Part shown: positions 2,227 through 60,544 of the stretch, piece after piece
Layout: every line of letters begins with the position of its first letter
Numbering within the stretch: position 1 is the stretch's first letter
The notes under the pieces: model-generated
The model's database searches: none
The model's input: only the letters and a program-made list of their open reading frames with translations
Told to the model about the DNA's origin: nothing
Position numbers and translations under genes: made by a program
DNA from: Heteronotia binoei
Lineage: Eukaryota
Direction: 5' to 3'
Length of the DNA stretch: 64,000 bases
Assembly: GCF_032191835.1 (NCBI RefSeq)
Contig: NC_083237.1
Location: 10,354,001 to 10,418,000, forward strand

Positions 2227-3237
2227 TCACAGTGTTTGAGAGCATGGAGGACATTTTTTAATGGGCATCCGCTGCTTCATTACTTTCAGGAATGCAAATG
2301 GAGAGATATGGCCTGATGTACTCAATACTTTATTGGCAGCAACTTTGAACTCTTTGTTCCTGATTGTGAAGATAAAAGGGCTCATCATGGGCAAAAAAGC
2401 TATGATCATGAGGTACATCATTTTGTTGACCCGGGTGTCACCTTGGGTTGAAGGTCTCAAGTACATAAAAAATGATGCCCCGTAGAGGATGCCAACAATA
2501 GTGAGATGAGAAGAGCAAGTGGAAAAGGCTTTTGACCGTCCACTGACAGATGGGATCTGAACAATAGTGGTTATAATGCATACATAAGAAACTAGTGTAA
2601 AGAGAAATGAACCCCACATGACGAGGGCCCCATAAAAGGCACCTATAAGCTCAAACAATGTTGTGTCAGCACAAGCTAATTTCAAGATAGGCCCAATATC
2701 ACAGAAGAAGTGGTCAATGACATTGTCTCCACAATATGGATAAGTCCAAACAACAATACCCTGGAAAAAGTTAATTGTAAACCCACTGAACCAAGTCAGC
2801 AACGAAAGGTACAAACAAAGTCCATTTGTCATCATGGTATTATATAGAAAGGGTTTGCAAATGGCTATGTAACGGTCAAAAGACATGACGGTGAGATTGA
2901 AGAACTGTATGGCTCCCATAGAAAAGGCAACGTAAGCTTGTGCCATGCAGCATGTGAAGCAGATGGTCTTTTGGTCCAAAACTAGGTTGGTCAGCATCTT
3001 TGGTACTACCACTGTGGTGCTCCAGAGCTCAGCCATTGAAAAGTTGGTGAGGAAGAAATACATGGGCATGTGGAGTTTGGGTTCCAGAAAGACCACTGTG
3101 ATGATTAAACAGTTGCCTGAGACTGAAATGAAGTACATCAGAAGTACAAGAGTGAAAAACATAATCCTTATTTCATGAAGTTCCGGAAAACCCAGAAGAA
3201 CAAACTCGGTGATGAATGTTTCATTGTCCACCCCCAT
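2227..3237 (-). CDS. Olfactory receptor OR-a, intact, 336 aa, class II (family-6-like)
   Basis: Single-exon 7TM ORF with OR motifs: N-glycosylation site NET, LHMPMYFFL, MSFDRYIAICKP, HFFCD, KAFSTCSSHL, FTIRN. True start taken as the ATG at 3237, just after a pyrimidine tract and AG acceptor; the ORF-track extension is a (GGAA)n repeat. Confidence 0.95.
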   Translation of the reverse strand: MGVDNETFITEFVLLGFPELHEIRIMFFTLVLLMYFISVSGNCLIITVVFLEPKLHMPMYFFLTNFSMAELWSTTVVVPKMLTNLVLDQKTICFTCCMAQAYVAFSMGAIQFFNLTVMSFDRYIAICKPFLYNTMMTNGLCLYLSLLTWFSGFTINFFQGIVVWTYPYCGDNVIDHFFCDIGPILKLACADTTLFELIGAFYGALVMWGSFLFTLVSYVCIITTIVQIPSVSGRSKAFSTCSSHLTIVGILYGASFFMYLRPSTQGDTRVNKMMYLMIIAFLPMMSPFIFTIRNKEFKVAANKVLSTSGHISPFAFLKVMKQRMPIKKCPPCSQTL

Positions 3238-6200
3238 CTCCTTTAGAAATGGAAGGAAGAAAGGAGGGAAGGAAGGGAGGGAGGGAAGAAGGAAGGAAAG
3301 AAGGAAGGAAAAAATCATTTCTACCCAAACACATATTCATATACTTCTTGTTATATAGTATATCTAGTTAAATGCTACATGGTTACAGTTATATGTATTG
3401 TCATACCTGTATTCGTTACATATGCATACATAGATACACTCTTATACTGAATCAGACGCTTGGTCCAATAAAGTCTGTATTGTCTACTCATGCTGGCAGC
3501 AATCCTCTGTGACTCTCATGCAGACATCTTTCACACCATCTGCTATCTGATTCTTTCAACTGAAGATGCCGGGGATTGAACCTGGAATCTACTGCATGCC
3601 ATACAGATGCTCTAGCACTCTGAGCTGTTCTGTCAATACTAAATCCATATAGATTTAAAGTGTCTTATTTATTCATGTTCCTCTAACTCAAATTTCTATA
3701 CCGACATCTATATTAATTTTCTACTGCATTTTAAAATAGTTGACCTAAAAGGAGACAGAGAACATGCTTCAAAATATGTCAAAAGTCTCTTGTTTATCTC
3801 TCAGTCACCAGGCAGGAAAACTCTACTGAATCATTGTTCAAAATGGTAGAGTTCATGCAAATTATGTAATTGTTTCCTGACTAAGCCAACAACTGTGTTT
3901 ATTCACTGATGAATACTCCAAGTCACCTTTATTTTTTTTTTTAAAGAAGAGGTATACATATGTAACATTCCATTCACAAACATGCAAAGACAACAATATT
4001 TAAACAAACACATTCTGAATGCTTTGTATTGCAATGCCACTAGCAGAACAAATCAATAGGAGCTAGAGAAACTGCCATAGAACAAAAGTTCAAAAACTTA
4101 TACTCCAAAAACCCCTCACAGTTATGTACCTCACAGTGTCAGGAACATGGAATACTTTTGCTGATCACACACATAACAATCGCTTCTGGAAACATTTGTT
4201 GCAAGGTTGGTAGGTATAGTTCCATCCTCTGATGCTAGAAATATATATATTTTTTTCCAACTGGATATTCTAACCACTTAACTTAAAATCTTACTTATTC
4301 AAGAAATCCTGAGAAATGGTGACCTAAAGTGCTAATGATGCCGCTTGTGTTAAACAGCATTTCCTTTTCTTTGGAAACCTGCTAATAACGGAAGGTTTTC
4401 CCAAAAGAGCTCTCCCAAGGCTACTCTCACGCTTCATGCAACAACTAAAGAGAACAATTAAGTTTGAAGAAAGTTTAAAAAAAAATATCAAGAGAGTCAA
4501 TTCTTGAAGGAAAGAAAAAAGTCTCATTTGTATTTCTACCAATTAGACATCCAGCATCTGGAGGACCATAAATTGCTTATGGTAGCTCATTAGAAATTGT
4601 ATAACAATTATTAAAAAAAAAACCTGAAAAGTGTAGCAAGGACTTGTCTTTTGAAGGAACAATACCCAAAACAATAAGTCAGCAATTACAGGGCTAAATT
4701 TGAAGAGTCTTCCAATGTTGTGAAATCGTTTGAGGGAGGATTTCAATCAGTTACTAACCCCAGCCTTAAATCAAACCCTAGCCGTGATACAGTACGCATT
4801 TGTCCCTATCCCACTGCCTTACAGTGAGGAAGGAGGCTGCCATTATGCTACCTGGTTGTGACTGGATCCAGTTGCGATGAGGTTTTGGCAGTGGTCCAGG
4901 GAGTCACAGAATAGGTCAATGAAGAATAGGGCCGGGCATGATATACACGAGGAGAGGATTCAGATTTAGATGGCCTCATTTTGAGGATTCATCATGATGC
5001 TACAGCTGTTTTAGGGTTTAAGTTGAGAGGTCTGCTACTGACCTCTTCAAAAGGAGGTCCAAGCAGAAACACCTCCTGGAAGGAAAGAATATAAAAACAC
5101 TATGTAACACATCCGAGAAAAAGGAGTAATGCCACAGAAATCGTGGTACTGATGTGAAGGGTGGCTCACCGTTTTTTCATTCTCTTATAAGGACGACCAT
5201 ACTGAAATTGTCAATGACAGCTCTTCTGCTTTTAACTGCAGCTTTGACTGAAATCAGATGAACCTCTCTTTACTATTTTTCTCCATAATACAAGATTTTT
5301 ATTATTATTATTTTTTTGCTTAGTATGTTCTTATGATTACTGGGCAACCAAATTACTATCTACTCTTTAATAAAATACCTACGCATAGGACTGTAATGTG
5401 AGAATGCATTAAAACACTGGTTTAGTAAGATGGATAACATGCAGGTACACTTGCCAGTTACATTAAAATAGATACATCAAGGTCAACCATATTTCTTAGT
5501 ACTCTGAACCCTTTGTTGTTTTCTTACGAGGGGAGCGGAATTTGCCCCACTTGGAATCTCCACTGTCTCTTACTATATGGTTTCTGTGTGTGGGTGTGTG
5601 CATGTGTGTGTGGTTTTGTTATGTTATCCTTTTATTTGTTTGACATTTTAAACTCATATTGAGCTCTTTGGACCAGAAAAAAATACTATGTGGTGACTCC
5701 GCACGCTTATTATGACTAAGCAAAGTTATCTCATATTTTTCTGTGTGTGTTAACTGGGGAAACCAAAGGCCTTATCTTTATTGACATGAACAGATTGATA
5801 TGAAAAAAGTAAGCATGTATTGAAGAGCTTTGTGCCATGCCAGACCACTAATTCATCTAGCTTTGTATTCCAAATAGCAGGATCTCTATGGTCCACATAG
5901 TAACTTCAACAAGTTGTCCAGCCTTCTTAATATTTACATTTCACTTTATCGACCATTCACCAATGCACATTCATTGTGGAGTATCCTCCACTAGCCAATC
6001 ATTAAGAGTTGTGACAGGTGGGGCCATTGATATGCAACCCTGCTCACCACAATATGTGAAGAAAATAAGGAGGAATCTTACCAAGAGCCTCAGTGCCATG
6101 ACTTTGATGCCTGGCAACATACATGACCTGAAGGGGAACTGAATTTTGTCAAGGACTTCAGATTCTGCCTCTTCTCCAAAACATCTTCTCTCTTTAGAAA

Positions 6201-6612: not shown

Positions 6613-8626
6613 GAGCTGAGAGCTCAACATTGTGGAAATCCAAGCTATGATTTTAAAAAGGAAGATTCCAGGCTTTGTGAATCATGACTGCAAACAAATG
6701 GATGTGAATGTATATGAGCAATACACTTGGATCAGAAAGAAATCCTAAGCACTCAGGATCCTACTATTTCTCAGAATCCTACTTTAGTCTATTCAGTGGG
6801 GCTTTCTCCCAGGAAAATAATATCAGAATTGCACAGCAAGTCATCCTGACCCACAGTAATAATAGCAAAGAGGCTGACAGTGCTGCAGAATGAAATATTC
6901 ATAATATCTAGCACCTTGTCGTGAAGAAATGAATAAGATAAGAGAGGAGTGTGTCTCCAGCTTTTGCACACAGATACATTCATGAGTGATGTCTGATATT
7001 TTTTTGTGCTACCTCCAAAGAGGTTTGTCTCAGTGATTACAGACCAGCACTTTGTGCCAACTCAGAGATGCCTCTGAAGTCAGCCCAAAAAATCCCTGCA
7101 GATGGCAACATCTGCTGGCCGTTCCTATCCCATCCTCAACCCTTCCTCCAGGCTGCTCCACCTGGCTCAAAAAGTTACCACTTCCAAAGTGGTAGCAAAT
7201 TTTTGAGCTGGCCATCAGTCAGCTCCGGGTAGTGTGGATGGGGAAGGGCGCAAGTGCAGCGACTTGGCAGTGTGGAACTGCCAAGCTGCCCCAAGCTGTT
7301 CTCAGGTTGTTGGGTTTTTTTAACCAATCAGAGAGCTGGTGCACATTAGCACTTGCCCCCCAAAGGAAAAGAAAAGGAATCTGGCTTCTGGGTTGCCTTC
7401 CCATGTGAAGGCGGCCAGTCGCCTAGCAGACGGGATACGGGTGGCATGCGGGTGAGTGTGTGGAGGCTCCAGAATGGTTCTTTTCTGAGTGGTCCCAATT
7501 CAGGATGCCTCACAGCCACCCCAGAATGCCTGTCTGGTATCAGCCAGTGTGTCCTTCTTTCTTGCATGCGTAGTAATACTTGCCAGTATCTTCAGGTTTC
7601 AGGTTATTCAGCTGCAGGGAAACTTGGCTTTTGAAAATGTCCTTTGTGATGTTGGAAATGTTAGCATAAAATTTAACATGAAATAATCAGCAAAAGAAAA
7701 TATTGAAAAAATGTGGGTATCAATTTGCTAAAGGAGCAAAATAGAAAAAATGTGCTTTGTTTTCAGATGAAACATTCTGTTTGAAAAATACAGAATCACT
7801 CCTAAGCAAAAATGTATGAACTTATTTATTTATGAATTTACAGCATTTATATTCCATTATTCTGCCATTACAAGGTCATCAAGCCAGCAAACAATTTATA
7901 ACATACATGATGCAATTGCCCTATAAAACCATTAAAATAACCCCTGCCAAACTGGCATCATTAAAACATTTTTTAAAAGAGTTAACAAAAAGAACTAAAA
8001 TTCATGCAAAACATTTTTTAAAAAACAATTTGGTTCTGAGAGAGGGATCAAATGAAAGGAAAAGAGTTTACCCACTGGCAGTAGATAGCAAAGAGCGATA
8101 ATAATGGGCAATAAATACTATCAACAAAAATAACTGAGAGAAACCAGAGAGCAGCTCCCAAGTTGCTCTGTTTTGTATTTTCTTTTTATCCCATTTTCCT
8201 CCCCAATGGTAATGGTTATTAACACTGTTTTCCCTCCACCATTTTGTTCTCACAACAACAGCAGTGTGAAGTATTTTAGAACATCTAGGAGAATACCTCT
8301 CCCAAGGTCTTCTGTGGCAGAACAGAGATTCATACCCAGTTCTTCTAGATCATAGTCCAGCTCTCTGGCCACTGCACCATGCCTGGATTGGTTATCCAGA
8401 CACAGCACTCAAGCAGACCACCTGACTGAATTTCCAAAGATGGGGTCCATCAGAATTGCTTTGAGTCACCCGTTTATATTGGTATATTATATTATATTGG
8501 TTAAATTTGACCATATTTTCTCCAAACACTGGAATTGTTCCTGGAATTACTATAGCTGCCTTCTGCTATAAGCTAGTAAATTCCAAAATTAATTTTGGGA
8601 ATGGTGAATGTACAGCTTCCCAGAAC

Positions 8627-9633: not shown

Positions 9634-10641
9634 CTATGTTTGAGAGCATGGGGGGCATTTTTTCATGGGTATCCGCTGCTTCATTACCTCCATAAATGCA
9701 AATGGAAAGATATAGCCCAATATATTCAGTAGTTTATTGGCAGCAGTTTTGAATTCTTGGTTCCTGATTGTGAAGATAAAAGGGCTCATCATGGGCAACA
9801 AAACAACGACCATAAGGTACATCATTTTGTTGATCTGGGTGTCACCTTGGGTGGAAGGTCTCAGGTACATAAAAAATGATGCCCCGTAGAAGATGCCAAC
9901 AATAGTGAGATGGGAAGAGCAGGTGGAAAAGGCTTTTGACCGTCCACTGACAGATGGAATCTGAACAATAGCAGTTATAATGCAGGCATAAGAAACCAGC
10001 GTAAAGAGAAATGAACCCCACATAAGGATGGCCCCATAAAAGACACCTAGAAGCTCAAATGATGTTGTATCAGCGCAAGCTAATTTTAAAATAGGCCCAA
10101 TATCACAGAAGAAGTGGTCAATGACATTGTCTCCACAATATGGATAAGTCCAAACAACGATAATCTGGAAAAAGTTAATTGTAAACCCACTGAACCAAGT
10201 CAGCAACGAAAGGTACAAACAAAGTCCATTTGTCATCATGGTATTATATAGAAAGGGTTTGCAAATGGCTATGTAACGGTCAAAAGACATGACAGTGAGA
10301 TTGAAGAACTGTATGGCTCCCATAGAAAAGGCAACATAAACTTGTGCCATGCAGCATGTGAAGCAGATGGTCTTTTGGTCCAAAACTAGGTTGGTCAGCA
10401 TCTTTGGTACCACCACTGTGGTGCTCCAGAGTTCAGCCATTGAAAAGTTGGTGAGGAAGAAATACATGGGCATGTGGAGTTTGGGTTCCAGAAAGACCAC
10501 TGTGATGATTAAACAGTTGCCCGAGACTGAAATGAAGTACATCAGAAGTACAAGAGCAAAAAATATAATCCTTATTCCATGCAGTTCCGGAAAACCCAGA
10601 AGAACAAACTCAGTGATGAATGTTTCATTGCCCACCTCCAT
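9634..10641 (-). CDS. Olfactory receptor OR-b, 335 aa, recent tandem paralog of OR-a
   Basis: Same OR motifs and highly similar protein. ATG at 10641. The last Leu codon of OR-a is TAG here (9634-9636), immediately before the ancestral TGA. Confidence 0.95.
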   Translation of the reverse strand: MEVGNETFITEFVLLGFPELHGIRIIFFALVLLMYFISVSGNCLIITVVFLEPKLHMPMYFFLTNFSMAELWSTTVVVPKMLTNLVLDQKTICFTCCMAQVYVAFSMGAIQFFNLTVMSFDRYIAICKPFLYNTMMTNGLCLYLSLLTWFSGFTINFFQIIVVWTYPYCGDNVIDHFFCDIGPILKLACADTTSFELLGVFYGAILMWGSFLFTLVSYACIITAIVQIPSVSGRSKAFSTCSSHLTIVGIFYGASFFMYLRPSTQGDTQINKMMYLMVVVLLPMMSPFIFTIRNQEFKTAANKLLNILGYIFPFAFMEVMKQRIPMKKCPPCSQT

Positions 10642-10969
10642 CTCCTTCAGAAAGGAAGAAAGAAGTCTCAGCATATGGTTCCCAGTTGTTTTCTTTATTG
10701 CTAGCAATCCACAGTTATTTGGTAGTAATACCTCCCTAGATGTTCTATTACACTAAATAGTATGATTGCTTTGGTACTGTTATCTCCTTCCATTCCATTT
10801 CTTTCTGTATTTCATGTTGAACTATTGCAATGCCTGTAAATGTTATGTGCTATCATTTCACCCAACTCTGTATACCAATTATATTTTATGGCTATTCAAT
10901 GATTATTTGTTTATTTGAATGATACTATTGAGTTATATTTTGTATCATTTGTGTACTTTTCAATAAAAT

Positions 10970-11098
10970 NNNNNNNNNNNNNNNNNNNNNNNNNNNNNNN
11001 NNNNNNNNNNNNNNNNNNNNNNNNNNNNNNNNNNNNNNNNNNNNNNNNNNNNNNNNNNNNNNNNNNNNNNNNNNNNNNNNNNNNNNNNNNNNNNNNNN
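10970..11098. other. Assembly gap
   Basis: N run. Confidence 1.
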
Positions 11099-13149: not shown

Positions 13150-13510
13150 TTTTACACAGTAATACATGGCAGTGTCTTCAGGATTCAGACCATTCATTTG
13201 CAGATACACTTTGTTCTGACAGGTGGCACTTTCTTGATGGGTGATGAACCCAGTGCATGCCATAGAGATTCCAAGCACTGCATGAATCAGTAGGGACTCT
13301 CCAGACATTTTCTCCCACCACCTGTTTCCGCAAGAATCTGGCAAGAAACCTGCAGAAAATAATGAAAATAATATTATAGAATTATAACAGTATGCATGTA
13401 AAGAAAAGCTCATTACAAAGCCGTGAAGTTTTCTAGTCAAACGAGAGATAACCCCTTTTCTTATATGCCCAGAAGATCATTAGAAAAGTTATGAAAATAC
13501 TCCCTGACAT
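13150..13510 (-). pseudogene. IGHV: IGHV-like pseudogene VH1
   Basis: 46-bp leader MSGSIFITFLMIFWA (13465-13510) with donor GTAAG mutated to ATAAG; acceptor at 13350-13351; frameshifted FR1, GMHWV, and KVYLQMNGLNPEDTAMYYCVK; CDR2/FR3 deleted and RSS collapsed. Confidence 0.85.
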
Positions 13511-13619
13511 GACTTTTGTGCTAGGAAATGTCTCCTAGGAATGCACAGGGAATTGAATCCTATGAAAGATCTTGAATACTTTATCAACAGACTCCTTTTT
13601 AAAATGACACTAGATTGTC

Positions 13620-13627
13620 ATTTGCAT
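13620..13627 (-). promoter_or_regulatory. Ig octamer ATGCAAAT, VH1 promoter
   Basis: 110 bp upstream of the leader ATG, in VH-type orientation. Confidence 0.75.
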
Positions 13628-15435: not shown

Positions 15436-15547
15436 CGTTGCCACGTTGCTTTCTGCTCTTCATGAAAAAACAGCTGAGTGGCACTCAGTGGCACTCCCTG
15501 TCACTCAACTGTTTGGTTTTAATTGCTTGGAGTAATTTAAACAACTG

Positions 15548-16779: not shown

Positions 16780-16818
16780 GCTTTTTGCATGAGCTCAGAG
16801 CAGCCTCCATTCACTGTG
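16780..16818 (-). other. 23-RSS of VH2
   Basis: CACAGTG, 23 bp, GCAAAAAGC, directly after the V exon. Confidence 0.9.
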
Positions 16819-17302
16819 TCTCTCGCACAGTAACACACAGCCGTGTCTTCTTGCCTGAGGTTGCTCATCTGGAGGTAGAAGTTGGAGCTGTCCTTGGATG
16901 GCAGGTGAATAATAGTTGGTTGAAGAAGATCTGTAGTATGAAGAAGATCTGTAGTATGATCTGTAGTATGAAGAAAATCTGTAGTATCCAGGCCTTGCCC
17001 TGGCTTCTGTCTGACCCAAGCAGTGTACCAATCATTCAGGACAAATCCACTGGTGGCACACATCAGCTGAACAGATTCCCCGGGCCTCTTCAATTCTGAA
17101 CCTTCTTGGGTCAAAACAACCTCTGAATGGGCTCCTGGAAAGAATACTAAGTGAAGTCACTCTTACTTTCATACTTTGCACTAATGACAACATTCTTATC
17201 GTGGAACGATCTTATGAAGACGTTCCTAAAATGTTATGGGGGATAGAGAAAATTACCTTCCCAAACAGCTACAAAGAGAATCACATGGAGCCAATGTGCC
17301 AT
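16819..17302 (-). CDS. IGHV: IGHV-like gene VH2; open frame but CDR2 region scrambled, probably non-functional
   Basis: Leader MAHWLHVILFVAVWE (17257-17302, GTAATT donor). V exon 16819-17134: [57 protein letters not shown]. Confidence 0.85.
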
Positions 17303-17377
17303 GTTTCGTGGTCCAAAGAAGATGGTTTGAGTCCTTCCTTTTGAACCAGAGATCTTGAAGGCTCAGACAAATGCAGA

Positions 17378-17409
17378 TTTATAGAGACAAGCGTCACTTT
17401 CATTTGCAT
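17378..17409 (-). promoter_or_regulatory. VH2 promoter: octamer (17402-17409) and TATAAA (17378-17383)
   Basis: Exact octamer 100 bp upstream of the ATG, with a TATA box between them. Confidence 0.85.
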
Positions 17410-19415: not shown

Positions 19416-19454
19416 GGTTTTGGTGCAAGCTCTAATTCCCTTTTTCTCAATGTG
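19416..19454 (-). other. 23-RSS of VH3
   Basis: CACATTG, 23 bp, ACCAAAACC. Confidence 0.9.
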
Positions 19455-19953
19455 CATCTCTTGTGCAGTAATACACAGCCGTGTCCTCAGCTTTCAGGCT
19501 TGTCATACGCAGATAAATCTGTGATTTGGACCTATCTGCAGAGATGGTGAATCGGAATTTAAAAGCATCTGCATAGTGCGCTGTGCCCGCATAGATCCTT
19601 GCAATCCACTCTAGCCCCTTTTCAGGAGCCTGACGGACCCAGTGCATCCAGTAGCTGTCTATGTTGAACCCTGATGCTGTACAAGTGAGTTGGAGGGAAT
19701 CTCCAGGCCTTTTCACATCCCCTCCAGATTCCACCAAAGTCACATCAGACTGGACACCTAGAAAAGAGAGACACGTTATACGCCAATCCCGCACGGCTTA
19801 GCTTCTTGCAAATTGCTTCATGAGCCCGTTCATGGGAAGAGTGAGATAAAAATCAAAATAAGTAAATGCATTTAGTCAATTGCGTTAAAGCCAAAATGAA
19901 GAAATACCTTTGACAGCACAGAGAATGACAATGAAATGGAGCCAAAGAATCAT
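19455..19953 (-). CDS. IGHV: IGHV gene VH3, intact, clan III-like
   Basis: Leader [15 protein letters not shown] (19908-19953). V exon 19455-19757: [49 protein letters not shown]. Canonical splice sites. Confidence 0.95.
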
Positions 19954-20094
19954 TTCTGTTGGATGGAATAGAGGGGGAAGTGAGACGGAAGATGCTAGGT
20001 TGCAGTTAGGGGCAGGGAGCTGTAGATATCCTCTGCAACATCAGCCGGGGTGCAAAGCAAGAGAAGGGGAGTTTAAAGGACGGACTGTCCCACT

Positions 20095-20102
20095 ATTTGC
20101 AT
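20095..20102 (-). promoter_or_regulatory. Ig octamer, VH3 promoter
   Basis: Exact match 142 bp upstream of the ATG; same spacing as VH4. Confidence 0.85.
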
Positions 20103-23171: not shown

Positions 23172-23211
23172 GGTTTTTGTGCAAGATCTGAATTCTCTTT
23201 TCCTCGCTGTG
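23172..23211 (-). other. RSS of VH4 with 24-bp spacer
   Basis: CACAGCG, 24 bp (23181-23204), consensus nonamer ACAAAAACC. Confidence 0.85.
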
Positions 23212-23645
23212 GTTCTCTTGCACAGTAATACTTAGCCGTGTCCTCAGTTTTCAGGCTTGTCATACTCAGATGAACCTGCTGTTTGGAACGATCTGCAGAG
23301 ATTGTGAATCGGCCTTTAAAAGCACTGTATATTGTGCCTTTATTGATCTGATTGATCCATTCCAGTCCCTTTCCAGGAGCCTGACGGACCCAGTGTATCC
23401 AGTAGTCATCTATGTTGAGCCCGGATGTTGTACAAGTGAGTTGGAGGGAATCTCCAGGCCGTCGCACACCCCCACCGGATTCTACCAAAGTTATATCAGA
23501 CTGGACACCTAGGGAGGGAGAGAGAGAAGTTAGAAACCAACCAGTGCTGCTTAGCTTCCTGCAAGTGGCACTCGTCAATTCACAGAAAAAAAGAAATACC
23601 TTTGACAGCAAGGAGAGTGACAATTAAATGGAGCCAAAGAATCAT
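23212..23645 (-). CDS. IGHV: IGHV gene VH4, intact, same family as VH3
   Basis: Leader [15 protein letters not shown] (23600-23645). V exon 23212-23508: [39 protein letters not shown]. Confidence 0.95.
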
Positions 23646-23786
23646 TTCTGTTGGATGGATTAGAGGGAAATGTGAGGCAGACGATGCAAGGTTGCAATTA
23701 GAGGCCGGGAGCTGTATGTATCCTCGGAGTGATCAGCTGGAAAACAGAGCAAGAGGAGGGGAGTTTAAAGGATGGCCAGTCCCACT

Positions 23787-23794
23787 ATTTGCAT
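23787..23794 (-). promoter_or_regulatory. Ig octamer, VH4 promoter
   Basis: Exact match 142 bp upstream of the ATG. Confidence 0.85.
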
Positions 23795-26580: not shown

Positions 26581-26619
26581 CTTTTTTGCATGAGCCCAGA
26601 CCAGCTTCCATTCACTGTG
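26581..26619 (-). other. 23-RSS of VH5
   Basis: CACAGTG, 23 bp, GCAAAAAAG. Confidence 0.88.
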
Positions 26620-27085
26620 CGTCTTGTACAGTAATACACTGCTGTGTCTTCTGGCTTGAGGTTGTCCATTTGTACGTAAAAGTTGGAGCTGTCCTTGGAG
26701 GCCGTGAATCGCCCTCGGATGGTTGAGGAGTAGCTGTTGCTTGATGCTGAATAATAATAAAGCAGCCATTCTGGCCCTTTTTCTGGAAGCTGTCGGATCC
26801 AGTGCATGGTATAGCTGCTCAGGTCAAATCCACTGGTGGAACATGTCAGCCTGGTGGATTCTCCAGGCCTCTTCAGCTCTGGGCCTGACTGAGCGAGAAC
26901 AATTTCTGAAACACCCCCTGTAGAATGAAAAGGCACAGGGTTCAATATAAAGACCCAGTGATATTACCCAAGGATGGGATCATTTTTTCACCCATCCAAA
27001 CTAACAATTTGTTCTCCATATTTAAAAGCAGGGACTTACAAGAGAACGAGTTCATGACTAGGAATGCACTAAGCAGCCGTAACAT
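26620..27085 (-). CDS. IGHV: IGHV gene VH5, intact, same family as VH2
   Basis: Leader MLRLLSAFLVMNSFS (27040-27085, GTAAGT donor). V exon 26620-26917: [58 protein letters not shown]. Confidence 0.95.
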
Positions 27086-34500: not shown

Positions 34501-34539
34501 ACAATATCCATATGTTGTTTGGCCCACTGTCATCTGGTT

Positions 34540-35418: not shown

Positions 35419-36429
35419 TCACAGTGTTGGAGAGCATGTTGGACACTTTTTCACGGGCTTCCTTTGCTTTATTACCACCATGAATGCAAATGGAGAGACA
35501 CGGCCGAATATACTCAGTACTTTGTTGGCAGCAGATTCGAACTCCTTGTTCCTGATTGTGAAGACAAAAGGGCTCATCGTGGGCAAAAAACCTATGACCA
35601 CGAGGTGCATCACTTTGTTGACTTGGGTGTCACCTTGGGTTGAAGGTCTCAGGTACATGAAAAACGCTGCCCCGTAGAGGATGCCGACAATAGTGAGATG
35701 GGAAGAGCAGGTGGAAAAGGCTTTTGACCGTCCACTGACAGATGGGATCTGAACAATAGTGGTTATAATGCATCCATAAGAAACCAGCATAAACAGAAAT
35801 GAACCCCACATGACAATGACACCATAAAAGACTCCTAGAAGCTCAAACCATGTCGTATCAGCGCAAGCTAATTTCAAGATAGGCCCAATGTCACAGAAGA
35901 AGTGGTCAATGACATTGTCTCCGCAATATGGATAAGTCCAAACGACCATACCCTGTAAAAAGTTAATTGTAAACCCACTGAGCCAAGTCAGCAACGAAAG
36001 GTACAAACAAAGTCCATTTGTCATCGTGGCATTATATAAAAAGGGTTTGCAAATGGCTATGTAACGGTCAAAAGACATCACTGTGAGATTGAATAATTGT
36101 ATGGCTCCCATGGAAAAAGCAACGTAAGCTTGTGCCGTGCAGCATGTGAAGCAGATGGTTTTTTGGTCCAAAACTAGGTTTATCAGCATCTTCGGTACTA
36201 CCACTGTGGTGACACAAAGTTCAGCCAGGGAAAAGCTGCTAAGAAAGAAATACATGGGTATGTGGAGTTTGGGTTCCAGAAAGATCACTGCGAGGATTAA
36301 ACAGTTGCCTGAGACTGAAATGCAGTACACCAGAAGTACAAGAGCAAAAAACATCATCTTTATGCCATGAAGTTCCGGAAAACCCAGAAGAACAAACTCG
36401 GTGATTATTGTAAAATTGCTGGGCTTCAT
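35419..36429 (-). CDS. Olfactory receptor OR-e, intact, 336 aa, same clade as OR-a/b
   Basis: All OR motifs present. ATG at 36429 (MKPSNFT). Candidate splice acceptor at 36453-36454. Confidence 0.95.
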   Translation of the reverse strand: MKPSNFTIITEFVLLGFPELHGIKMMFFALVLLVYCISVSGNCLILAVIFLEPKLHIPMYFFLSSFSLAELCVTTVVVPKMLINLVLDQKTICFTCCTAQAYVAFSMGAIQLFNLTVMSFDRYIAICKPFLYNATMTNGLCLYLSLLTWLSGFTINFLQGMVVWTYPYCGDNVIDHFFCDIGPILKLACADTTWFELLGVFYGVIVMWGSFLFMLVSYGCIITTIVQIPSVSGRSKAFSTCSSHLTIVGILYGAAFFMYLRPSTQGDTQVNKVMHLVVIGFLPTMSPFVFTIRNKEFESAANKVLSIFGRVSPFAFMVVIKQRKPVKKCPTCSPTL

Positions 36430-39379: not shown

Positions 39380-39418
39380 GGTTTATGTAGGCCCTTGCAT
39401 GTTGTTTTTCACACTGTG
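39380..39418 (-). other. 23-RSS of VH6
   Basis: CACAGTG, 23 bp, ACATAAACC. Confidence 0.92.
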
Positions 39419-39893
39419 TGTCTTGCACAGTAATAAACTGCTGTGTCTTCAACTTTTAGGTTAGCCAGCTGCAGATATGTGGTGCTGATAGAGGTGTCCA
39501 CGGTGATGGTGACTCGACCTTCCAGAACCTTAGCGTAGCTTGTTGTGATGGTATTGGTCGTAATGTAACCAATCCACTCCAGTCCTTTCCCAGATGCCTG
39601 TCTAATCCAGAACATAGCATAGCTGGTAAATGTATACCCAGATCCCTTACAAGTGAGTCTCACTGATTCTCCAGGTCTTTTTAGTTCAGGACCAGACTGG
39701 TCAAACCTGACTTGAGATTGGACACCTGGAAATAAACAAAAAGAAGGAGCAGGTGAGGATTTGTTAGGACACCCATTTCATTTCAGCCTACAGTGCCAGA
39801 TGTTCATCCCTACTGTCCCCGGCTTTTTAATTGAAAATCCATTTTACCTGCTAATACAGCTGCCCAGAGGAAAAGGCATGACCAAAAAGACAT
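39419..39893 (-). CDS. IGHV: IGHV gene VH6, intact, clan I-like
   Basis: Leader [15 protein letters not shown] (39848-39893). V exon 39419-39725: [53 protein letters not shown]. Confidence 0.95.
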
Positions 39894-39982
39894 GGCTTCA
39901 TTGAATGAGAAGAAAGGATAATGATACCCCACTGAAGGAAATCTGCTTTAAAAATCTTTAGAAGGGCCAACACACATCCTGG

Positions 39983-39990
39983 ATTTGCAT
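39983..39990 (-). promoter_or_regulatory. Ig octamer, VH6 promoter
   Basis: Exact match 90 bp upstream of the ATG. Confidence 0.85.
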
Positions 39991-45043: not shown

Positions 45044-45071
45044 TGTTTGTGTCTAGCTTTATCTCATTGTG
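45044..45071 (-). other. Putative 12-RSS of VH7
   Basis: CACAATG, 12 bp (AGATAAAGCTAG), ACACAAACA. The 23-spacer position reads TATGCATCT, which is not a nonamer. Confidence 0.6.
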
Positions 45072-46200
45072 GATGGCACAGTAATACACGCCACTGTCGG
45101 CAGCTCCCAGGCTCTTCATCTCTAAGTAAGCTGTGTTAATCGAGTTATTCCTGGAAATAGCAAATCTTCCATGCCAAATTGGACGTATGGTTTTTACTGT
45201 ACCATCTGGGTTCACCTCTCCAACCCACTGAAGTCCCTGGTCACTGATTTTTTGAACCCATTCTATCCAGTACTGAGCAAAAGACGAGGAGGAAGATTTG
45301 CAAGAAAGAATCACTGTCTCCCCTGGTTGTCTAACTTCTGAAGAAGGTTGGATGACAGTCATCTCGGATTTAGCAGCTGGAAAGATAACAGAAAAAAAAA
45401 GTTCTTAATTTTAACCATTTTTCCACCACATTCAATCCTTGTATCCATGCAAAATGGTTAACCCTTCATTCCATCTGTACAGCTATCGTGTAAAGTAGTT
45501 CAGAATTCTCACCACTTTGTAAGGGTTGGAAAAAGCTAGGAGATCACAGTGTCCAATCTGTCACTCTGCATTAGTCTCTTCTATAGTCGTAATACAGATA
45601 TCACAGGTTTGGTCTGAACACTTTTTGCCACTGGACTTTTCATATTCTGGCAGCTATCATATAACTGGGTCATACAGATTCCAAAATAAATGCAAGGAAT
45701 GGTTAGGAGGGAGGAAGGAAGGAAGCTAATGAGGAAGGGAAGCAAGCTGCAGGATGGCTTGGTAATGGGAGATGAGGTAGCTATGGAAAAATAGATTGTT
45801 TAATCTGAGTTGCATTGTCCATTCTAAATCTCAGATTCAGCTCATCTGGCCAAGGGGAATTGCCATCTAGGAAGCATTTAAAGTGATCACCACCATGGGC
45901 AACTGTCCTGGCATCCTTTGGTCCAGTGGATCACATCTCTGTTTACAGCTGCTTGGACTAGAGACACCCATTGGGAAATGTATCAAAACATTGTCAAATC
46001 CTCTGTGATCCACACCATTCATCCAGTTTAGGAATACAGAAAGTCAGTTGAGAGCATCTTCAATGAATGGCTAAAAAGTTTCCCATCTCTTTTTTTTCTC
46101 TCCAAAGAGAAACACATCACACTGTTTTCACCATTCCTCACTTAGTATACTCACCAAAGAAGATGCCCATCAATATACATAGTACTGTGAAAGCCTGCAT
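45072..46200 (-). CDS. IGHV: Divergent VH-type V gene VH7; intact frame, long leader intron, atypical RSS
   Basis: Leader MQAFTVLCILMGIFF (46155-46200, GTGAGT donor), 778-bp intron, V exon 45072-45376: EMTVIQPSSEVRQPGETVILSC..WIEWVQK..GLQWVG..GRFAISRNNSINTAYL..DSGVYYCA. Confidence 0.88.
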
Positions 46201-46325
46201 GATGTACATGTGTGCATAAACCCACAATGACAATTCCTTATTGGAAGAAAGGAAAATCACACAGGGAGTCTTCAAGAGAGATCTACTGGGTAGTATTTCT
46301 TATATGAGCTTTTAAGGGAAGTGTC

Positions 46326-46333
46326 ATTTGCAT
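46326..46333 (-). promoter_or_regulatory. Ig octamer, VH7 promoter
   Basis: Exact match 126 bp upstream of the ATG; TATA-like ATATAAG near 46299-46305. Confidence 0.85.
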
Positions 46334-50535: not shown

Positions 50536-52425
50536 GGCCACTCTGTGAAACAGCATGCTGTTCCTGATGGACTATTTATCTGTTTTGGTCATCCAGCAAT
50601 TCTTATGAAGAAGTTTCAGAAGATAACTAGTAAAAACAGATAGTTCTGAGATTTTGGGGATATAAGCTTTTGAGAATCAAAACTCCCTATGTCAGATACC
50701 AATATGAACAACTGACATTCATCTAAGCTCTAATTTGGAGTCAAGAAGAAGGATTTTTTTAATAGATGAATTGTGAACACTTTGCGTGTGTGTTGTCTTA
50801 TTTACACAAACAGTGCTCAAAATGTGAAATTTGCTGCCAGAGGATGTAGTGATAGTCATGGGAATAAACAGCTCTAAAGGGAAATTTGTTAGATTCATGG
50901 AGGATAGGTCTATCTTTTGTCCATTCTGAACCTTTCTTTTGTCCATCCTGAACCTACTGTCCATCAGCCTCATTGGAGAGATCTGCACATGAGTATAGCA
51001 GATCCCAGTCTGACATTTTAACCCCTACCCTCCAATGGTCCAAGGATACACTAAATTCTCAGGGAGAGTACTGGTATTCCAAGAGAAGGGATTTGGGTAA
51101 TAGAAAGAGGCACCAAAATGTGTGTTGGAGTGTTTGTGAAAACACAGGAGCAAAAGCTACTCAATGTGAAGAACGAAAGTAACCATGAATAATTTAAGAA
51201 CCTCTCATTAGCCTGATATATAAGAACAAACCTGTGCTTGTTTTACCTCAGTATTTTCAGCCCCTGATTTCATCCAACCTTTCACTATTATGTTAATTTT
51301 TTTGGGGGGGGGGTTGCTCTTTAAAAGCATCCCAAGTGCCATTTCCAGTGATTTTCACTTAAAGGGCGATATATAGTAGTGACAATGAGTGGGACTGCCA
51401 CTCCATGGCTGTGAAGGGAAAATAAAAATGGAGGGAAAATCTAGCCTCTGAGGAAGGTAAGTGGAAGGGGTTCATTGGTTTACTTGAAAGGACTTTGTAA
51501 AAACAGTAATGTTCAGCATGTGATACTTGAAATGCTACACACAATAGCTACGCAGACCAGTCCTGTGAAGGCATACACAGAATTCAATCCACTGACACTT
51601 CATATGAATGATGTACACCTAGGTAGTATTAAACACTTAGTTGGTAAGGTACCTAAATATGGTTGTATTCCAGTAGTTTAACTTGAATCAATAATGCTCA
51701 TTGTTGGAGTGGTTGTGTGAGTGCATGAACAAGGTTTAAGGAGAACAGAGGTGAAGAGGAGAATGTGGTTGGGAAAAACAATACACTGAACAGCCTGTGA
51801 GGACAAATTCAGATTAATACCGGCCAATAGCACTAAATGCAATTTGTAGATTTGTGTTCCATATTTTGCCCTGGCATGGATGGTCCTCGCTACCTCAGTC
51901 TCATCAGATCTCAGAAACAAAGCAGGATCCACGCAGGTATGCACTTTGATTGGAGACGATCAAAGAAGTCCAGCGTTATTACGTATAGGCAGACAATGGC
52001 AAACCACCTCTGGCCCTCTCTTGCCTTGAAAACCCTGTGAAGTCCCCAGAAATCAGCTGATACTTGATAGGACTTTACATTGCCGATTTTGCAAAATGGA
52101 GCGTCGATGTAAGCTGTGCACCTTTGTTTGAAAATTAATGAGAAAAAAGAAGAAGGAAATATGTCTCTCATGATGAAACAGCCAATAAACTCCCTGCTTA
52201 GGAGTCCTGATTCAGTGGTACATTCAGTGTTTTGCACTAAGAAGGTCTCAGGTTCAATCTCTGAAATCTCTAAGTTAAACAATTTCAAGTAGCAAGTTGC
52301 AGCAGATGATAATGAACTTGATTGGTCGGTAATCCATCTTGATGTAAGGCAGTTAATTATGTTCTTTTCCCACTTCTTCTTCCAGGGAGGTGAAGAGGGA
52401 CAGGTGCATAGGTCCTCTCTGTGAA

Positions 52426-53352
52426 ATGCTTAAGGCAAATCAATCTGCAATCACGGAGTTTATCCTTCAAGGGTTTCCAGGCTCTCCACAGTCACAGAAG
52501 TATCTGTTTGCCCCTGTTCTGTTTATGTACATCCTCACCGTAGTTGGCAACATGCTGATCATTTTCATTATTGTCCATGATCAACGTTTGCATAATCCCA
52601 TGTACTTCTTCCTGGGAAACTTCTCTTTCCTGGAGATCTGGTATGTGACCACCTTGTTACCCAAGATATTAGTTAACTTTCTGGCCAAGAGGAGGGCCAT
52701 CTGTTTCTACTGTTGCATCACCCAAGCCTTTTTCCACTTCTTACTGGGAGCCACTGAATTCTTTCTGCTAGCTGCTATGTCCTTGGATCGCTACACGGCC
52801 ATCTGCAAGCCTTTGCATTACAGCGTTATCATGAGCCGTAGGCTTTGCTTCCAGCTAGCAACGGGATCGTGGCTGGGAGGGTTTCTCACAGTCATTGTTC
52901 AGACCATCATGCTCTGCCAACTCCCATTCTGCGGTCCCAATCTGATTAACCATTTCTACTGTGATGTGACCCCAATCCTGAGCTTGGCGTGTGCTGACAC
53001 ACACCTCCTGGAACAGATTGTTTTGGTGGGATCTGCCCTGCTTCTCTTCACTTCCTTCTTATTCACCGCAATATCGTACTTCTTCATCATATTGACGATA
53101 CTGCGCATCCCTTCCTCTTCAGGACGACAGAAGGCTTTCTCGACCTGTGCTGCCCACCTTACAGTTGTATCAATACAATATGGAACTGTGATGTTTATGT
53201 ATGTGAAACCGAAGGCCAATGCCTCCCTTGAGGTGAACAAAGTGGTTGCTGTGTTGAATACGGTCATAACTCCTCTCCTCAATCCCTTTATCTACACTTT
53301 GAGGAACAAAGATGTCAAAGAAGCTTTGAAGAAAACTGCAAATATAAAATAA
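52426..53352 (+). CDS. Olfactory receptor OR-f, intact, 308 aa, family-6-like
   Basis: MLKANQS start, [46 protein letters not shown]. Pyrimidine tract and AG acceptor end at 52385. Confidence 0.95.
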   Translation: MLKANQSAITEFILQGFPGSPQSQKYLFAPVLFMYILTVVGNMLIIFIIVHDQRLHNPMYFFLGNFSFLEIWYVTTLLPKILVNFLAKRRAICFYCCITQAFFHFLLGATEFFLLAAMSLDRYTAICKPLHYSVIMSRRLCFQLATGSWLGGFLTVIVQTIMLCQLPFCGPNLINHFYCDVTPILSLACADTHLLEQIVLVGSALLLFTSFLFTAISYFFIILTILRIPSSSGRQKAFSTCAAHLTVVSIQYGTVMFMYVKPKANASLEVNKVVAVLNTVITPLLNPFIYTLRNKDVKEALKKTANIK

Positions 53353-53938: not shown

Positions 53939-54079
53939 NNNNNNNNNNNNNNNNNNNNNNNNNNNNNNNNNNNNNNNNNNNNNNNNNNNNNNNNNNNNNN
54001 NNNNNNNNNNNNNNNNNNNNNNNNNNNNNNNNNNNNNNNNNNNNNNNNNNNNNNNNNNNNNNNNNNNNNNNNNNNNNNN
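53939..54079. other. Assembly gap
   Basis: N run next to a purine-rich simple repeat. Confidence 1.
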
Positions 54080-58747: not shown

Positions 58748-59590
58748 ATCCCTCATTTAAAAAGCATCTAAACTAACTGCAACCTCACACAATTATAAAT
58801 TGTGTTAATTTATGCAAATAGAGCTGATTTCTTCCCTGTTGCAAAACTGGAATTATTTTGGTCAGAACTCGGGAGTTTTCATTTAATGTCAGGAGTGAAT
58901 ATATGTTTCCTCTTTCATTTATTTTATAGCCTCTTACATTATTTTTTTTGTCCGTCATTTTGGTTTTCCACATTTTGCCATTGGGTTTATCCAAGGTTTG
59001 TAATACATATGCTAGCTGTATCCAGGCCTCCAATTCAGGGGGAGCTCACAGGAGCACAGCTCCTGAACCTTTCTGAGAGTTCCACCTCCTCCTTCTGAGA
59101 GTTCCATCTCCTTGTCCATTGAATAGTATGTGCAGCTGCATAACAATCCCTGGATGAGCTCCACCACCTATTTTTTGACAAAACGACCCCTGGCTGTATC
59201 ATATGTATTTCTACATATGTATGTGTTTAGAAGTACATTGCAGTTATTTACACACAACATGTTATTTATTTATTTCTGAACATTGATATCCCACTCCTCC
59301 TGAAACTGAATTATGCTGACTAATTCACAAATAACTGGGAAAAACTGCATTACTTTTGCAGGAACAATTTAGTGCAGGAAAAAGAAAAAGTGCCGCAAAA
59401 AAGAAAATAGTGAAAAAGGAAATACAGGAGGCGCAAAAGAGAAACTGAGATTTTTCAAGCAATGCAGGCAGGTATCAGGAATTGCAAATTATCTCTATTT
59501 GTTCTGGAAAACTGAAGCCTCTTCATCAGAGATAACCTTCAATGGCATTATAAAGGTTCATTGTCTTTTTCTTTCTCCTCAGAACCACAA

Positions 59591-60544
59591 ATAGAGCTAG
59601 CTGCCACTAACCAATCACTGGTGAAAGAGTTTATCTTCCTATCTTTCCCCATACGCCGCGACATGCAGATAATCTCCTTTCTGGTCCTGATTCTCACATA
59701 TCTCCTCACCCTCACGGGAAATGTGGTCATCCTTTCCCTTATATGGACCAATCAAAGTCTTCACACTCCGATGTATTTCTTCCTCAGCAACTTGTCTTTC
59801 CTGGACATCCTCTTCACCACAGTGATTGCTCCCAAAATGCTCTCCAATCTTCTGGCTGAAAAGAAAACAATTTCCTTGCACGGTTGCTTTGCCCAAATTT
59901 ATTTATATTTCTTCCTGGGGACTGTGGAGTTCATCCTTCTATCTGTCATGTCTTTTGATCGTTATGTGGCCATATGCAACCCACTGAGGTACACTGTAAT
60001 AATGAATGGGCGAGTCTGCTTTTTGATGGTTTTGGGATGTTGGGTGGGAGCCTTTCTGTCAGTCTTTTGTCCTGCAGTTCTTCTCTTCAGACTTCCCTAT
60101 TGTCGGCAAACTATCAACCACTTCTTTTGTGACATTGCACCATTGTTGGATGTGGCTTGTTTTGACACCCACTTCATAGAACTCCTTAGTTTCTTCATGT
60201 CTTCCTTAGTGGTCCTCAGTTCCTTGATGCTCACGGTGGTATCTTACACTTACATCATCTCTACCATCCTCAAAATCCCTTCTGGAAAAGGGAGGCAGAA
60301 GGCCTTTTCTACTTGTGCCTCTCACATCACTGTGGTCACCATTGCTTATGGAAGTTCTATCTTCATGTATGTCCGTCCAAATCAAAGCAGCTCTCTAGCC
60401 TTTGATAAGGTCGCTGCTATCCTGACAACAGTGGTGACCCCTCTTCTGAATCCCTTTATATATAGTCTCCGGAATGAGAAAGTGAAAGAAGTTTTCAAGG
60501 AGGCACTAGAAAGGAAATTTCTTCATAAGCATGATATTGCTTGA
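59591..60544 (+). CDS. Olfactory receptor OR-g; open frame, but the expected start codon reads ATA
   Basis: [45 protein letters not shown] all intact. No ATG before the NQS site; first in-frame ATG is at 59663. Confidence 0.85.

What the first reader, a model, noticed from the sequence alone, without database searches (positions are those of the whole stretch)
2227..60544. Immunoglobulin VH array interleaved gene-by-gene with olfactory receptors
Seen: OR,OR,VH,VH,VH,VH,VH,OR,OR,OR,VH,VH,OR,OR within 60 kb, with intact members of both families and no gap between the VH blocks and OR-c/d/e. Established: both families show one-gene, one-allele choice; OR clusters flank the mammalian TRA/TRD locus; and VH-like genes occur in TRA/D loci of frogs, birds and platypus. 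Inference: this is either an IGH locus grown into an OR cluster, or a relic of IGH-TRA/D-OR linkage. All V genes point left, so deletional joining of VH6 or VH7 would excise the intervening ORs in lymphocytes. How novel this is for squamates I cannot verify here.
Basis: partly seen in the sequence, partly recalled or inferred. Interest (0 to 1): 0.85.

Follow-up and report, generated by a model that had tools for sequence, protein, structure and literature searches.

The report
Antibody V genes interleaved with smell receptors
In a gecko genome, antibody heavy-chain V gene segments and intact olfactory receptor genes alternate along one stretch of DNA; the same layout occurs in other geckos, a skink and a wall lizard, so it is an old, conserved feature of the lizard antibody locus and not an assembly error.

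Summary
The window is Heteronotia binoei chromosome CM063339.1, about 10.354-10.418 Mb. It holds seven olfactory receptor (OR) loci: five intact, one with a stop and a frameshift, one fragment. It also holds seven VH loci, all on the minus strand: five with an intact V-exon, one disrupted by a tandem repeat, one fragment.

The V genes carry IGH hallmarks:
- a 46-nt leader exon;
- a forward ATGCAAAT octamer 97-149 nt before the ATG (five genes plus the relic V1f);
- 23/24-bp-spacer RSS (V2-V6);
- best PDB matches that are all antibody heavy chains.

The core block 11099-53938 has no gap.

The same VH/OR6X1-like interleaving, with recognisable V5, V6 and V7 orthologues, is found in Gekko kuhli, Eublepharis macularius, Tiliqua scincoides and Podarcis raffonei. 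The embedded ORs form one well-supported squamate clade. Both families show purifying selection (dN/dS 0.14-0.52). On the same chromosome, loci about 470 kb before and 170 kb beyond the window also mix OR, V2R and minus-strand VH.

My best reading is a distal part of the germline IGHV region with chemoreceptor genes embedded since early squamate evolution. D-J-C genes in cis and rearranged transcripts could not be tested. I found no paper describing this arrangement. The scan had already noted VH mixed with V2R genes elsewhere on this chromosome.

The parts
2227..3318 (-). ORa, intact OR6X1-like olfactory receptor
   Evidence: 363-aa ORF. Pfam 7tm_4 E 1.7e-43. 90% identical to ORb. dN/dS 0.27 against ORb.
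7567..7650 (-). Small VH FR3-like fragment
   Evidence: tblastn with V4 residues 66-93, E 1e-4. Weak match.
9634..10707 (-). ORb, intact OR6X1-like olfactory receptor; tandem duplicate of the ORa unit
   Evidence: ORF. Identical to annotated protein P0098 of H. binoei. Duplication unit shown.
10970..11098 (.). Assembly gap 1, in the 5' flank of ORb
   Evidence: N run. Both flanks are collinear with the ungapped ORa paralogue unit.
13150..13627 (-). V1f, a VH relic: FR3 only, no RSS, but an upstream octamer at 13620-13627
16780..17409 (-). V2, probable pseudogene. Octamer 17402-17409, leader ATG 17302, V-exon 17134-16819, heptamer-23-nonamer 16818-16780. CDR2 replaced by a tandem repeat at 16921-16987.
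19416..20102 (-). V3, intact VH (VESGG type). Octamer 20095-20102, leader ATG 19953, V-exon 19757-19455, CACATTG-23-ACCAAAACC.
23172..23794 (-). V4, intact VH (VESGG type). Octamer 23787-23794, leader ATG 23645, V-exon 23508-23212, CACAGCG-24-ACAAAAACC.
26581..27085 (-). V5, intact V-exon. Leader ATG 27085, V-exon 26917-26620, CACAGTG-23-GCAAAAAAG. No octamer within 1.3 kb upstream of the V-exon.
   Evidence: Orthologues in T. scincoides (76% aa) and E. macularius.
27582..28569 (-). ORc, OR6X1-like pseudogene with an in-frame stop after TM4 and a frameshift near TM1
34538..35071 (-). ORd, degenerate OR fragment with several stops
35419..36528 (-). ORe, intact OR6X1-like olfactory receptor
   Evidence: ORF. 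Pfam. Homologues named OR6X1-like. dN/dS 0.15-0.24 against orthologues.
39380..39990 (-). V6, intact VH (IGHV1/7-like). Octamer 39983-39990, leader ATG 39893, V-exon 39725-39419, CACAGTG-23-ACATAAACC.
   Evidence: Orthologues 87% (G. kuhli), 77% (T. scincoides) and 61% (P. raffonei). One 184-nt RNA-library contig lies inside the exon.
45044..46333 (-). V7, intact divergent VH. Octamer 46326-46333, leader ATG 46200, 778-nt intron, V-exon 45376-45072, CACAATG-12-ACACAAACA (12-bp spacer).
52390..53352 (+). ORf, intact olfactory receptor, on the opposite strand to the V genes
   Evidence: ORF. Pfam 7tm_4 E 4e-50. A related OR lies in the same position and orientation next to V7 in G. kuhli.
53939..54079 (.). 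Assembly gap 2, between ORf and ORg, bordered by a GA-rich simple repeat
   Evidence: The join was not testable.
59561..60544 (+). ORg, intact olfactory receptor of a more distant lineage
   Evidence: ORF. Pfam E 3e-50. Long branch in the tree.

Best explanation
The window is a distal piece of the germline immunoglobulin heavy-chain V region of the gecko Heteronotia binoei. Class II OR6X1-like olfactory receptor genes are embedded between VH segments, and outside the window V2R vomeronasal receptor genes are too.

The VH segments are ordinary recombining IGHV genes, all pointing the same way. The ORs are ordinary, selectively maintained odorant receptor genes. I see them as passengers in a region that evolves by local tandem duplication and loss, with no functional coupling needed. 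The mosaic arose before geckos, skinks and lacertids diverged and has been kept since.

In a B cell that joins a distal V (for example V6) by deletion, every OR between that V and the D-J cluster would be lost on that allele, which costs a lymphocyte nothing.

Shown here: gene content, order, orientation, IGH-type cis elements, conservation and selection. Inferred: that D-J-C lie in cis at lower coordinates, that these V genes are used in antibodies, and that the ORs are expressed in the nose.
For: - Content and order.
- IGH hallmarks: a 46-nt L-part1 and an 11-nt L-part2 in V2-V7. A forward octamer 97-149 nt upstream of the leader ATG in V2, V3, V4, V6 and V7, plus one upstream of relic V1f. 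In total there are 19 octamers in the window against 5.1 expected.
- RSS: heptamer-23/24-nonamer in V2-V6.
- All 60 best PDB matches listed for V6 and for V7 are antibody heavy-chain V domains, including fusion constructs and nanobodies.
- The V genes are 30-52% identical to each other except V3/V4, so they represent several VH families, as in an IGH array.
- Genome and position identified.
- Independent assemblies of four other squamates show VH exons in the same orientation within 10 kb of the orthologous ORs, with V5, V6 and V7 orthologues.
- The embedded ORs form a 19-row clade (SH-aLRT 99) with gecko, skink and lacertid members. All 10 members whose context was read have a VH-like exon within 10 kb; the one at L009 is degenerate.
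- RSS are conserved in the orthologues.
- dN/dS is 0.14-0.40 for the ORs and 0.16-0.52 for the V genes.
- On the same chromosome, L009 (9.88 Mb) holds V2R, OR and a degenerate V, and L010 (10.59 Mb) holds OR, OR, VH and V2R, with the V genes on the minus strand.
- Scan notes place VH plus V2R 680-740 kb before the window.
Against: - No D, J or C gene was seen. The tools could not reach the rest of the chromosome, and the scan notes hold nothing on constant genes.
- RNA evidence is only one 184-nt contig inside the V6 exon in a metatranscriptomic run. It shows neither splicing nor a V(D)J junction.
- V7 has a 12-bp, not a 23-bp, spacer. V5 lacks an octamer.
- No member of the embedded OR clade was seen in snakes or anguimorphs. 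The nearest homologues checked in Thamnophis, Elgaria, a turtle and an alligator have no VH within 10 kb. How far the arrangement extends is therefore open.
Confidence: 0.75

Rival explanations
1. The mosaic is a relic of an ancestral tetrapod linkage IGH - OR cluster - TRA/TRD. In squamates the VH array and the bordering OR cluster then became interdigitated. This can be true together with the best explanation.
For: In frogs IgH and TCR alpha/delta are tightly linked, and OR genes flank TCR alpha/delta in amphibians, birds and mammals (PMC3457774; PMC8945572). An unchecked scan note reports a TCR-alpha-type V inside an OR cluster 1.89 Mb beyond the window on the same chromosome.
Against: The embedded ORs are OR6X1-like, not OR10G3-like. 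The turtle and alligator OR6X1-like loci read here have no VH within 10 kb. The TRA locus of this genome was not located.
Confidence: 0.3
2. The V genes are VH-like segments that serve a T-cell receptor locus, like the VH-delta genes of frogs, birds and platypus, rather than the antibody heavy chain.
For: VH-delta genes cannot be told from VH by sequence (PMC3457774). ORs and a possible TRA-type V are on the same chromosome.
Against: Squamates are reported to have lost TRD (PMC11754216). Forward octamers typical of IGHV promoters precede five of the six complete genes. Several divergent VH families are interspersed over at least 0.7 Mb. No TRAV/TRDV-type V is in the window.
Confidence: 0.05
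3. The V genes are orphons: copies outside the working IGH locus that no longer rearrange.
For: IGHV orphons next to OR genes exist in humans (from memory, not checked). D-J-C genes in cis were not shown here.
Against: Open V-exons, leaders, splice sites and RSS are conserved in orthologues separated since early squamate divergence, with dN/dS 0.16-0.52. Orphons are expected to decay.
Confidence: 0.05
4. The interleaving is an assembly artefact that joins IGH and OR contigs.
For: There are two N gaps in the span.
Against: The block with VHx5-ORx3-VHx2-OR is ungapped. Gap 1 flanks match an ungapped paralogue. Four independent assemblies of other species show the same neighbours.
Confidence: 0.02

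Closest known systems
Mammalian IGH V region (human 14q32, mouse, rat)
   Same: An array of same-orientation VH segments of mixed families, each with an octamer promoter, split leader and 23-bp-spacer RSS. The rat array also holds a few non-IGHV genes, including one OR pseudogene at its distal end (PMC2890078).
   Different: Here intact, selectively constrained OR genes recur between VH segments: five intact ORs in 64 kb, with more ORs and V2R genes over about 0.7-1 Mb. The arrangement, with individual V orthologues, is conserved across distant lizard families. That is not expected for fast-turnover IGHV arrays.
TRA/TRD locus with its flanking OR genes, and VH-delta genes
   Same: An antigen-receptor V array next to OR genes, with VH-type V genes living beside ORs (PMC3457774, PMC8945572).
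   Different: In TRA/TRD the ORs border the locus rather than alternate with V genes. The V genes here have IGH-type promoters and no TRAV/TRDV neighbours. Squamates are reported to lack TRD (PMC11754216).
Human IGHV orphon clusters near OR4 genes (15q11, 16p11); from memory, not checked here
   Same: VH-type sequences and OR genes side by side.
   Different: Orphons are recent, non-rearranging copies. The genes here keep RSS, leaders and open frames across deep squamate divergences.

Membership tests
IGHV gene segments of an IGH locus | V-set domain of VH type (FR motifs, Cys23, Trp41, Cys104) | tested here: met
   Pfam V-set for V2-V7. All 60 best PDB matches listed for V6 and for V7 are antibody heavy-chain V domains. 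Alignment.
IGHV gene segments of an IGH locus | Split leader: L-part1 of about 46 nt, an intron, and an 11-nt L-part2 joined to the V-exon | tested here: met
   46-nt L-part1 with a GT donor and AG acceptor in V2-V7. Introns are 91-150 nt, and 778 nt in V7.
IGHV gene segments of an IGH locus | Forward ATGCAAAT octamer in the promoter | tested here: met
   Present 97-149 nt upstream of the ATG in V2, V3, V4, V6 and V7, and upstream of relic V1f. Absent in V5. 19 octamers in the window against 5.1 expected.
IGHV gene segments of an IGH locus | RSS with a 23-bp spacer at the 3' end | tested here: met
   23 or 24 bp in V2-V6. Not met in V7, which has a conserved 12-bp spacer.
IGHV gene segments of an IGH locus | D, J and C (IGHM etc.) genes downstream in cis | not testable with these tools
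   The rest of the chromosome could not be fetched. Scan notes hold nothing on constant genes. All VH seen between 9.88 and 10.59 Mb are on the minus strand.
IGHV gene segments of an IGH locus | Use in rearranged VDJ transcripts | tested here: inconclusive
   One 184-nt contig from an RNA library lies inside the V6 exon with 2 mismatches. No junction was seen.
VH-delta genes of a TRA/TRD locus | Position among TRAV/TRDV genes, upstream of TRD/TRA D-J-C | tested here: not met
   No TRAV/TRDV-like V in the window or in loci L009 and L010. TRD is reported lost in squamates (PMC11754216). The wider context was not testable.
IGHV orphons | Non-functional copies outside the locus, free of constraint on RSS and reading frame | tested here: not met
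   RSS, leaders and open frames are conserved in orthologues of four other squamates. dN/dS is 0.16-0.52.
Class II olfactory receptors, OR6X1-like | Intronless ORF of about 310-340 aa with a 7tm_4 domain and OR motifs | tested here: met
   Pfam 7tm_4 E 1e-43 to 1e-50 for ORa, ORe, ORf and ORg. Nearest named homologues are 'olfactory receptor 6X1-like'. Tree. dN/dS 0.14-0.40.
Class II olfactory receptors, OR6X1-like | Expression in olfactory sensory neurons | not tested
   No olfactory-epithelium RNA was available.

The most novel reading that the evidence does not exclude
The squamate IGHV region has been a stable mosaic of three stochastically, monoallelically chosen receptor families (VH, OR, V2R) for roughly 200 million years. 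That age is my estimate of when geckos split from other squamates, not a tool result. On this reading the mosaic descends from an ancestral IGH-OR-TRA/D neighbourhood, and it is kept because the families tolerate, or share, the same repressive chromatin environment. Within it, one conserved VH lineage (V7) with a 12-bp-spacer RSS could, by the 12/23 rule, join JH directly without a D segment.
Probability: 0.15. Interest if true: 0.8.

Novelty: new variant of a known kind. Interest (0 to 1): 0.55.

Why it matters
IGHV arrays are usually described as nearly pure, fast-evolving V clusters. Here a heavy-chain V region carries intact chemoreceptor genes between its V segments. That neighbourhood, down to single V orthologues, has survived the split of geckos, skinks and lacertids.

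This offers a natural system for two questions:
- How are two gene families that each use one-gene, one-allele choice insulated from each other in B cells and in olfactory neurons?
- Does loop-extrusion scanning of the V region tolerate foreign genes?

It also bears on how IGH, TRA/TRD and OR clusters were arranged in early tetrapods.

There is a practical consequence too. Automatic annotation already fuses an OR with a V exon in Gekko kuhli, so reptile IGH and OR catalogues need care in this region.

Tried and rejected
- RNA support: the three RNA runs that hold part of 39370-45369 cover mostly two repeats, at 40370-40770 and 42370-42970. Only one short contig lies in V6, with no junctions, so this is inconclusive.
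- Homologue search with V7 found no candidate sharing words, so the V7 lineage seems unannotated in protein databases.
- CTCF-like sites after the RSS: only V5 has a 12/14 match within 200 nt. In all there are 19 such matches in the window against 6.3 in shuffles, with no pattern.
- EBF/Olf-1 palindromes: 3 against 1.3 expected, not significant.
- An exact consensus RSS search found nothing, because every RSS departs from the consensus by at least one base.
- A shared VH+OR duplication cassette inside the window is not supported. Duplications are OR-only (ORa/ORb unit, ORc/ORe) or V-only (V3/V4).
- Outgroup and other-lineage loci without VH within 10 kb: alligator L007, Thamnophis L008, turtle L011, Elgaria L012. 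These may be paralogues, so this is weak evidence of absence.
- Literature searches for ORs or V2Rs inside a reptile IGH locus found nothing. The only related items were a rat OR pseudogene in IGHV and the ORs bordering TRA/TRD.
- Scan notes gave no constant-region or J-cluster position.

Full report
**What is in the window**

A six-frame ORF list, Pfam and tblastn of the window's own OR and V translations against the window give the following order.

| Feature | Coordinates | Strand | State |
|---|---|---|---|
| ORa | 2227-3318 | - | intact |
| V fragment | 7567-7650 | - | small fragment |
| ORb | 9634-10707 | - | intact |
| Gap 1 | 10970-11098 | . | N run |
| V1f | 13150-13224 | - | FR3 relic |
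| V2 | V-exon 16819-17134 | - | probable pseudogene |
| V3 | 19455-19757 | - | intact |
| V4 | 23212-23508 | - | intact |
| V5 | 26620-26917 | - | intact V-exon |
| ORc | 27582-28569 | - | pseudogene |
| ORd | 34538-35071 | - | degenerate fragment |
| ORe | 35419-36528 | - | intact |
| V6 | 39419-39725 | - | intact |
| V7 | 45072-45376 | - | intact |
| ORf | 52390-53352 | + | intact |
| Gap 2 | 53939-54079 | . | N run |
| ORg | 59561-60544 | + | intact |

The details differ a little:
- V1f is only an FR3 relic.
- V2 keeps an open frame, but a tandem repeat at 16921-16987 replaces the end of FR2, CDR2 and the start of FR3.
- ORc has an in-frame stop and a frameshift.
- ORd is a degenerate fragment.

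That leaves five ORs with intact reading frames and five V genes with intact V-exons.

**The gaps**

Neither N run lies in a gene, and 11099-53938 is continuous. That stretch holds five VH, three OR, two VH and ORf.

For gap 1, a self-comparison shows that ORb and its flanks are a tandem copy of the ungapped ORa unit. 2067-3261 matches 9472-10664 at 91.6%, and 3428-4726 matches 11212-12500 at 78.4%. So the sequence on both sides of the gap is in the expected order and orientation.

Gap 2 could not be tested. It matters only for ORg.

**Are the V genes heavy-chain V genes?**

V2 to V7 each have:
- an ATG-initiated 46-nt first leader exon with a GT donor;
- an intron of 91-150 nt (778 nt in V7);
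- an AG acceptor and an 11-nt second leader part.

A forward ATGCAAAT octamer lies 97-149 nt upstream of the ATG in V2, V3, V4, V6 and V7. One also lies upstream of the relic V1f. The window has 19 octamers against 5.1 expected.

V2-V6 end in a heptamer, a 23- or 24-bp spacer and an A-rich nonamer.

All 60 best PDB matches listed for V6 and for V7 are antibody heavy-chain V domains, including fusion constructs and nanobodies.

The V genes are only 30-52% identical to one another, except V3/V4 at about 74-76%. Several VH families are therefore interspersed, as in IGH arrays.

**Which genome, and where**

The nearest V6 homologue is from Gekko kuhli at 87%.

The OR search returned a protein encoded by the window itself, on a 68,086,271-bp contig shared with annotated Heteronotia binoei proteins. 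The look-up then placed it on GCA_032191835.1, CM063339.1. Mapping that locus back gives window = about 10,354,001-10,418,000, in plus orientation.

ORa-ORe are 'olfactory receptor 6X1-like' by the names of their nearest homologues.

**Is the interleaving real and conserved?**

| Species | Locus | What was found |
|---|---|---|
| Gekko kuhli | CM122952.1, 61.08-61.13 Mb | ORf-like on the opposite strand, a V7 orthologue (78%), a V6 orthologue (87%), an ORe-like gene on the same strand, then a run of VH genes and another OR. One gene model there even fuses an OR with a V exon. |
| Eublepharis macularius | L003 | VH exons within 10 kb of the closest OR6X1-like orthologue, in the same orientation |
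| Tiliqua scincoides | L004 | V7-like, V6-like, two V5-like, OR, V4-like, OR |
| Podarcis raffonei | L005 | VH exons within 10 kb of the closest OR6X1-like orthologue, in the same orientation |

A maximum-likelihood tree of 59 ORs puts ORa, ORb and ORe in a 19-row clade (SH-aLRT 99) with gecko, skink and lacertid members. All ten members whose surroundings I read have a VH-like exon within 10 kb; the one beside the L009 member is degenerate.

Four independent assemblies with the same neighbours rule out a misjoin. They also date the arrangement to before these lineages split.

**Selection**

| Comparison | dN/dS |
|---|---|
| OR paralogues | 0.27-0.40 |
| OR orthologues | 0.14-0.24 |
| V5, V6, V7 orthologues and V3/V4 | 0.16-0.52 |

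The RSS of the V orthologues are also conserved. Orphons or dead copies would not keep frames, leaders and RSS over such distances.

**The wider neighbourhood**

On the same chromosome, locus L009 (9.876-9.897 Mb) holds a V2R gene, an OR of the embedded clade and a degenerate V. Locus L010 (10.579-10.600 Mb) holds two ORs, a VH with an RSS and a V2R. Both V genes are on the minus strand of the record, like all those in the window.

Earlier scan notes, which I did not check directly, place VH genes mixed with V2R genes 680-740 kb before the window. They also place a TCR-alpha-type V in an OR cluster 1.89 Mb beyond it.

The VH/chemoreceptor mosaic therefore spans at least 9.88-10.59 Mb by my own data. 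It probably reaches from 9.62 Mb.

**What could not be shown**

No D, J or C gene was reachable, so 'IGH locus proper' rests on the cis elements, the orientation and the conservation.

The RNA runs that hold part of 39370-45369 mostly cover two repeats. One 184-nt contig (2 mismatches) lies inside the V6 exon, without any junction.

Nearest homologues in Thamnophis, Elgaria, a turtle and an alligator have no VH within 10 kb. They belong to other branches of the tree, so the distribution outside geckos, skinks and lacertids is open.

**Mechanism**

The simplest account has VH, OR and V2R genes as three families that grow by local duplication and have shared one chromosomal neighbourhood since early squamate history. 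Duplications inside the window are OR-only or V-only, so there is no sign here of a joint cassette.

Motif scans found no sign of shared regulatory elements:
- EBF/Olf-1 palindromes were not enriched.
- Only V5 has a CTCF-like match close behind its RSS.

If D-J-C lie at lower coordinates, deletional joining of V6 or V7 removes ORc-ORe, ORb and ORa on that allele. This follows from the geometry. It is inference.

**Comparison with what is known**

OR genes border TRA/TRD in tetrapods, and IgH is tightly linked to TCR alpha/delta in frogs (PMC3457774; PMC8945572). The rat IGHV region contains six non-IGHV genes, including one OR pseudogene (PMC2890078).

Full-text searches found no description of intact ORs or V2Rs woven into a reptile IGH V region. 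I therefore rate it a new variant of a known kind of locus.

The linkage-relic idea stays possible but untested. The ORs here are OR6X1-like, not OR10G3-like.

**A side result**

V7 has heptamer-12-nonamer instead of a 23-bp spacer. The 12-bp spacing is the same in the V7 orthologues of G. kuhli, T. scincoides and P. raffonei, whereas the sequence beyond the nonamer no longer aligns between the geckos and the skink or lacertid.

The cross-species conservation is new here.

Noticed in passing
window 45044-46333 (-); L001:7350-7690; L004:538-870; L005:7016-7350: V7 is an intact, divergent VH gene whose RSS has a 12-bp spacer. The same heptamer-12-nonamer is present in its orthologues in Gekko kuhli, Tiliqua scincoides and Podarcis raffonei, while the sequence after the nonamer no longer aligns between the geckos and the other two. 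By the 12/23 rule such a V could join a JH (23-bp spacer) directly but not a DH. It has a 46-nt leader, a long intron (778 nt) and an octamer. No protein database entry shares words with it.
   Followed up: partly
L001:14905-20562 (Gekko kuhli, protein P0112): The public annotation of Gekko kuhli fuses an OR6X1-like ORF with a downstream VH exon into one 422-aa model (Pfam 7tm_4 plus V-set). This is an annotation artefact caused by the interleaving.
   Followed up: partly
L009 and L010 (H. binoei CM063339.1 9.876-9.897 and 10.579-10.600 Mb); L012 (Elgaria): V2R vomeronasal receptor genes (ANF_receptor, NCD3G, 7tm_3) sit next to OR6X1-like genes. In H. binoei they also sit next to VH segments.
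   Followed up: partly
window 16921-16987: A tandem repeat (30 nt x2, or 18 nt x4) inside the V2 exon replaces CDR2 but keeps the reading frame open.
   Followed up: yes
window 40370-40770 and 42370-42970: Two repeat copies in inverted orientation, very abundant in three metatranscriptomic RNA runs and 90-99% alike. They are probably a transcribed SINE-like family.
   Followed up: no
window 29146-30085: A tandem array with a period of about 104 bp and about 92% identity between copies, lying between ORc and ORd.
   Followed up: no
window 14753-15484 (-): Two adjacent 116-aa ORFs on the minus strand between V1f and V2. From their sequence I suspect a decayed retroelement reverse-transcriptase gene. 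No domain search was run on them.
   Followed up: no
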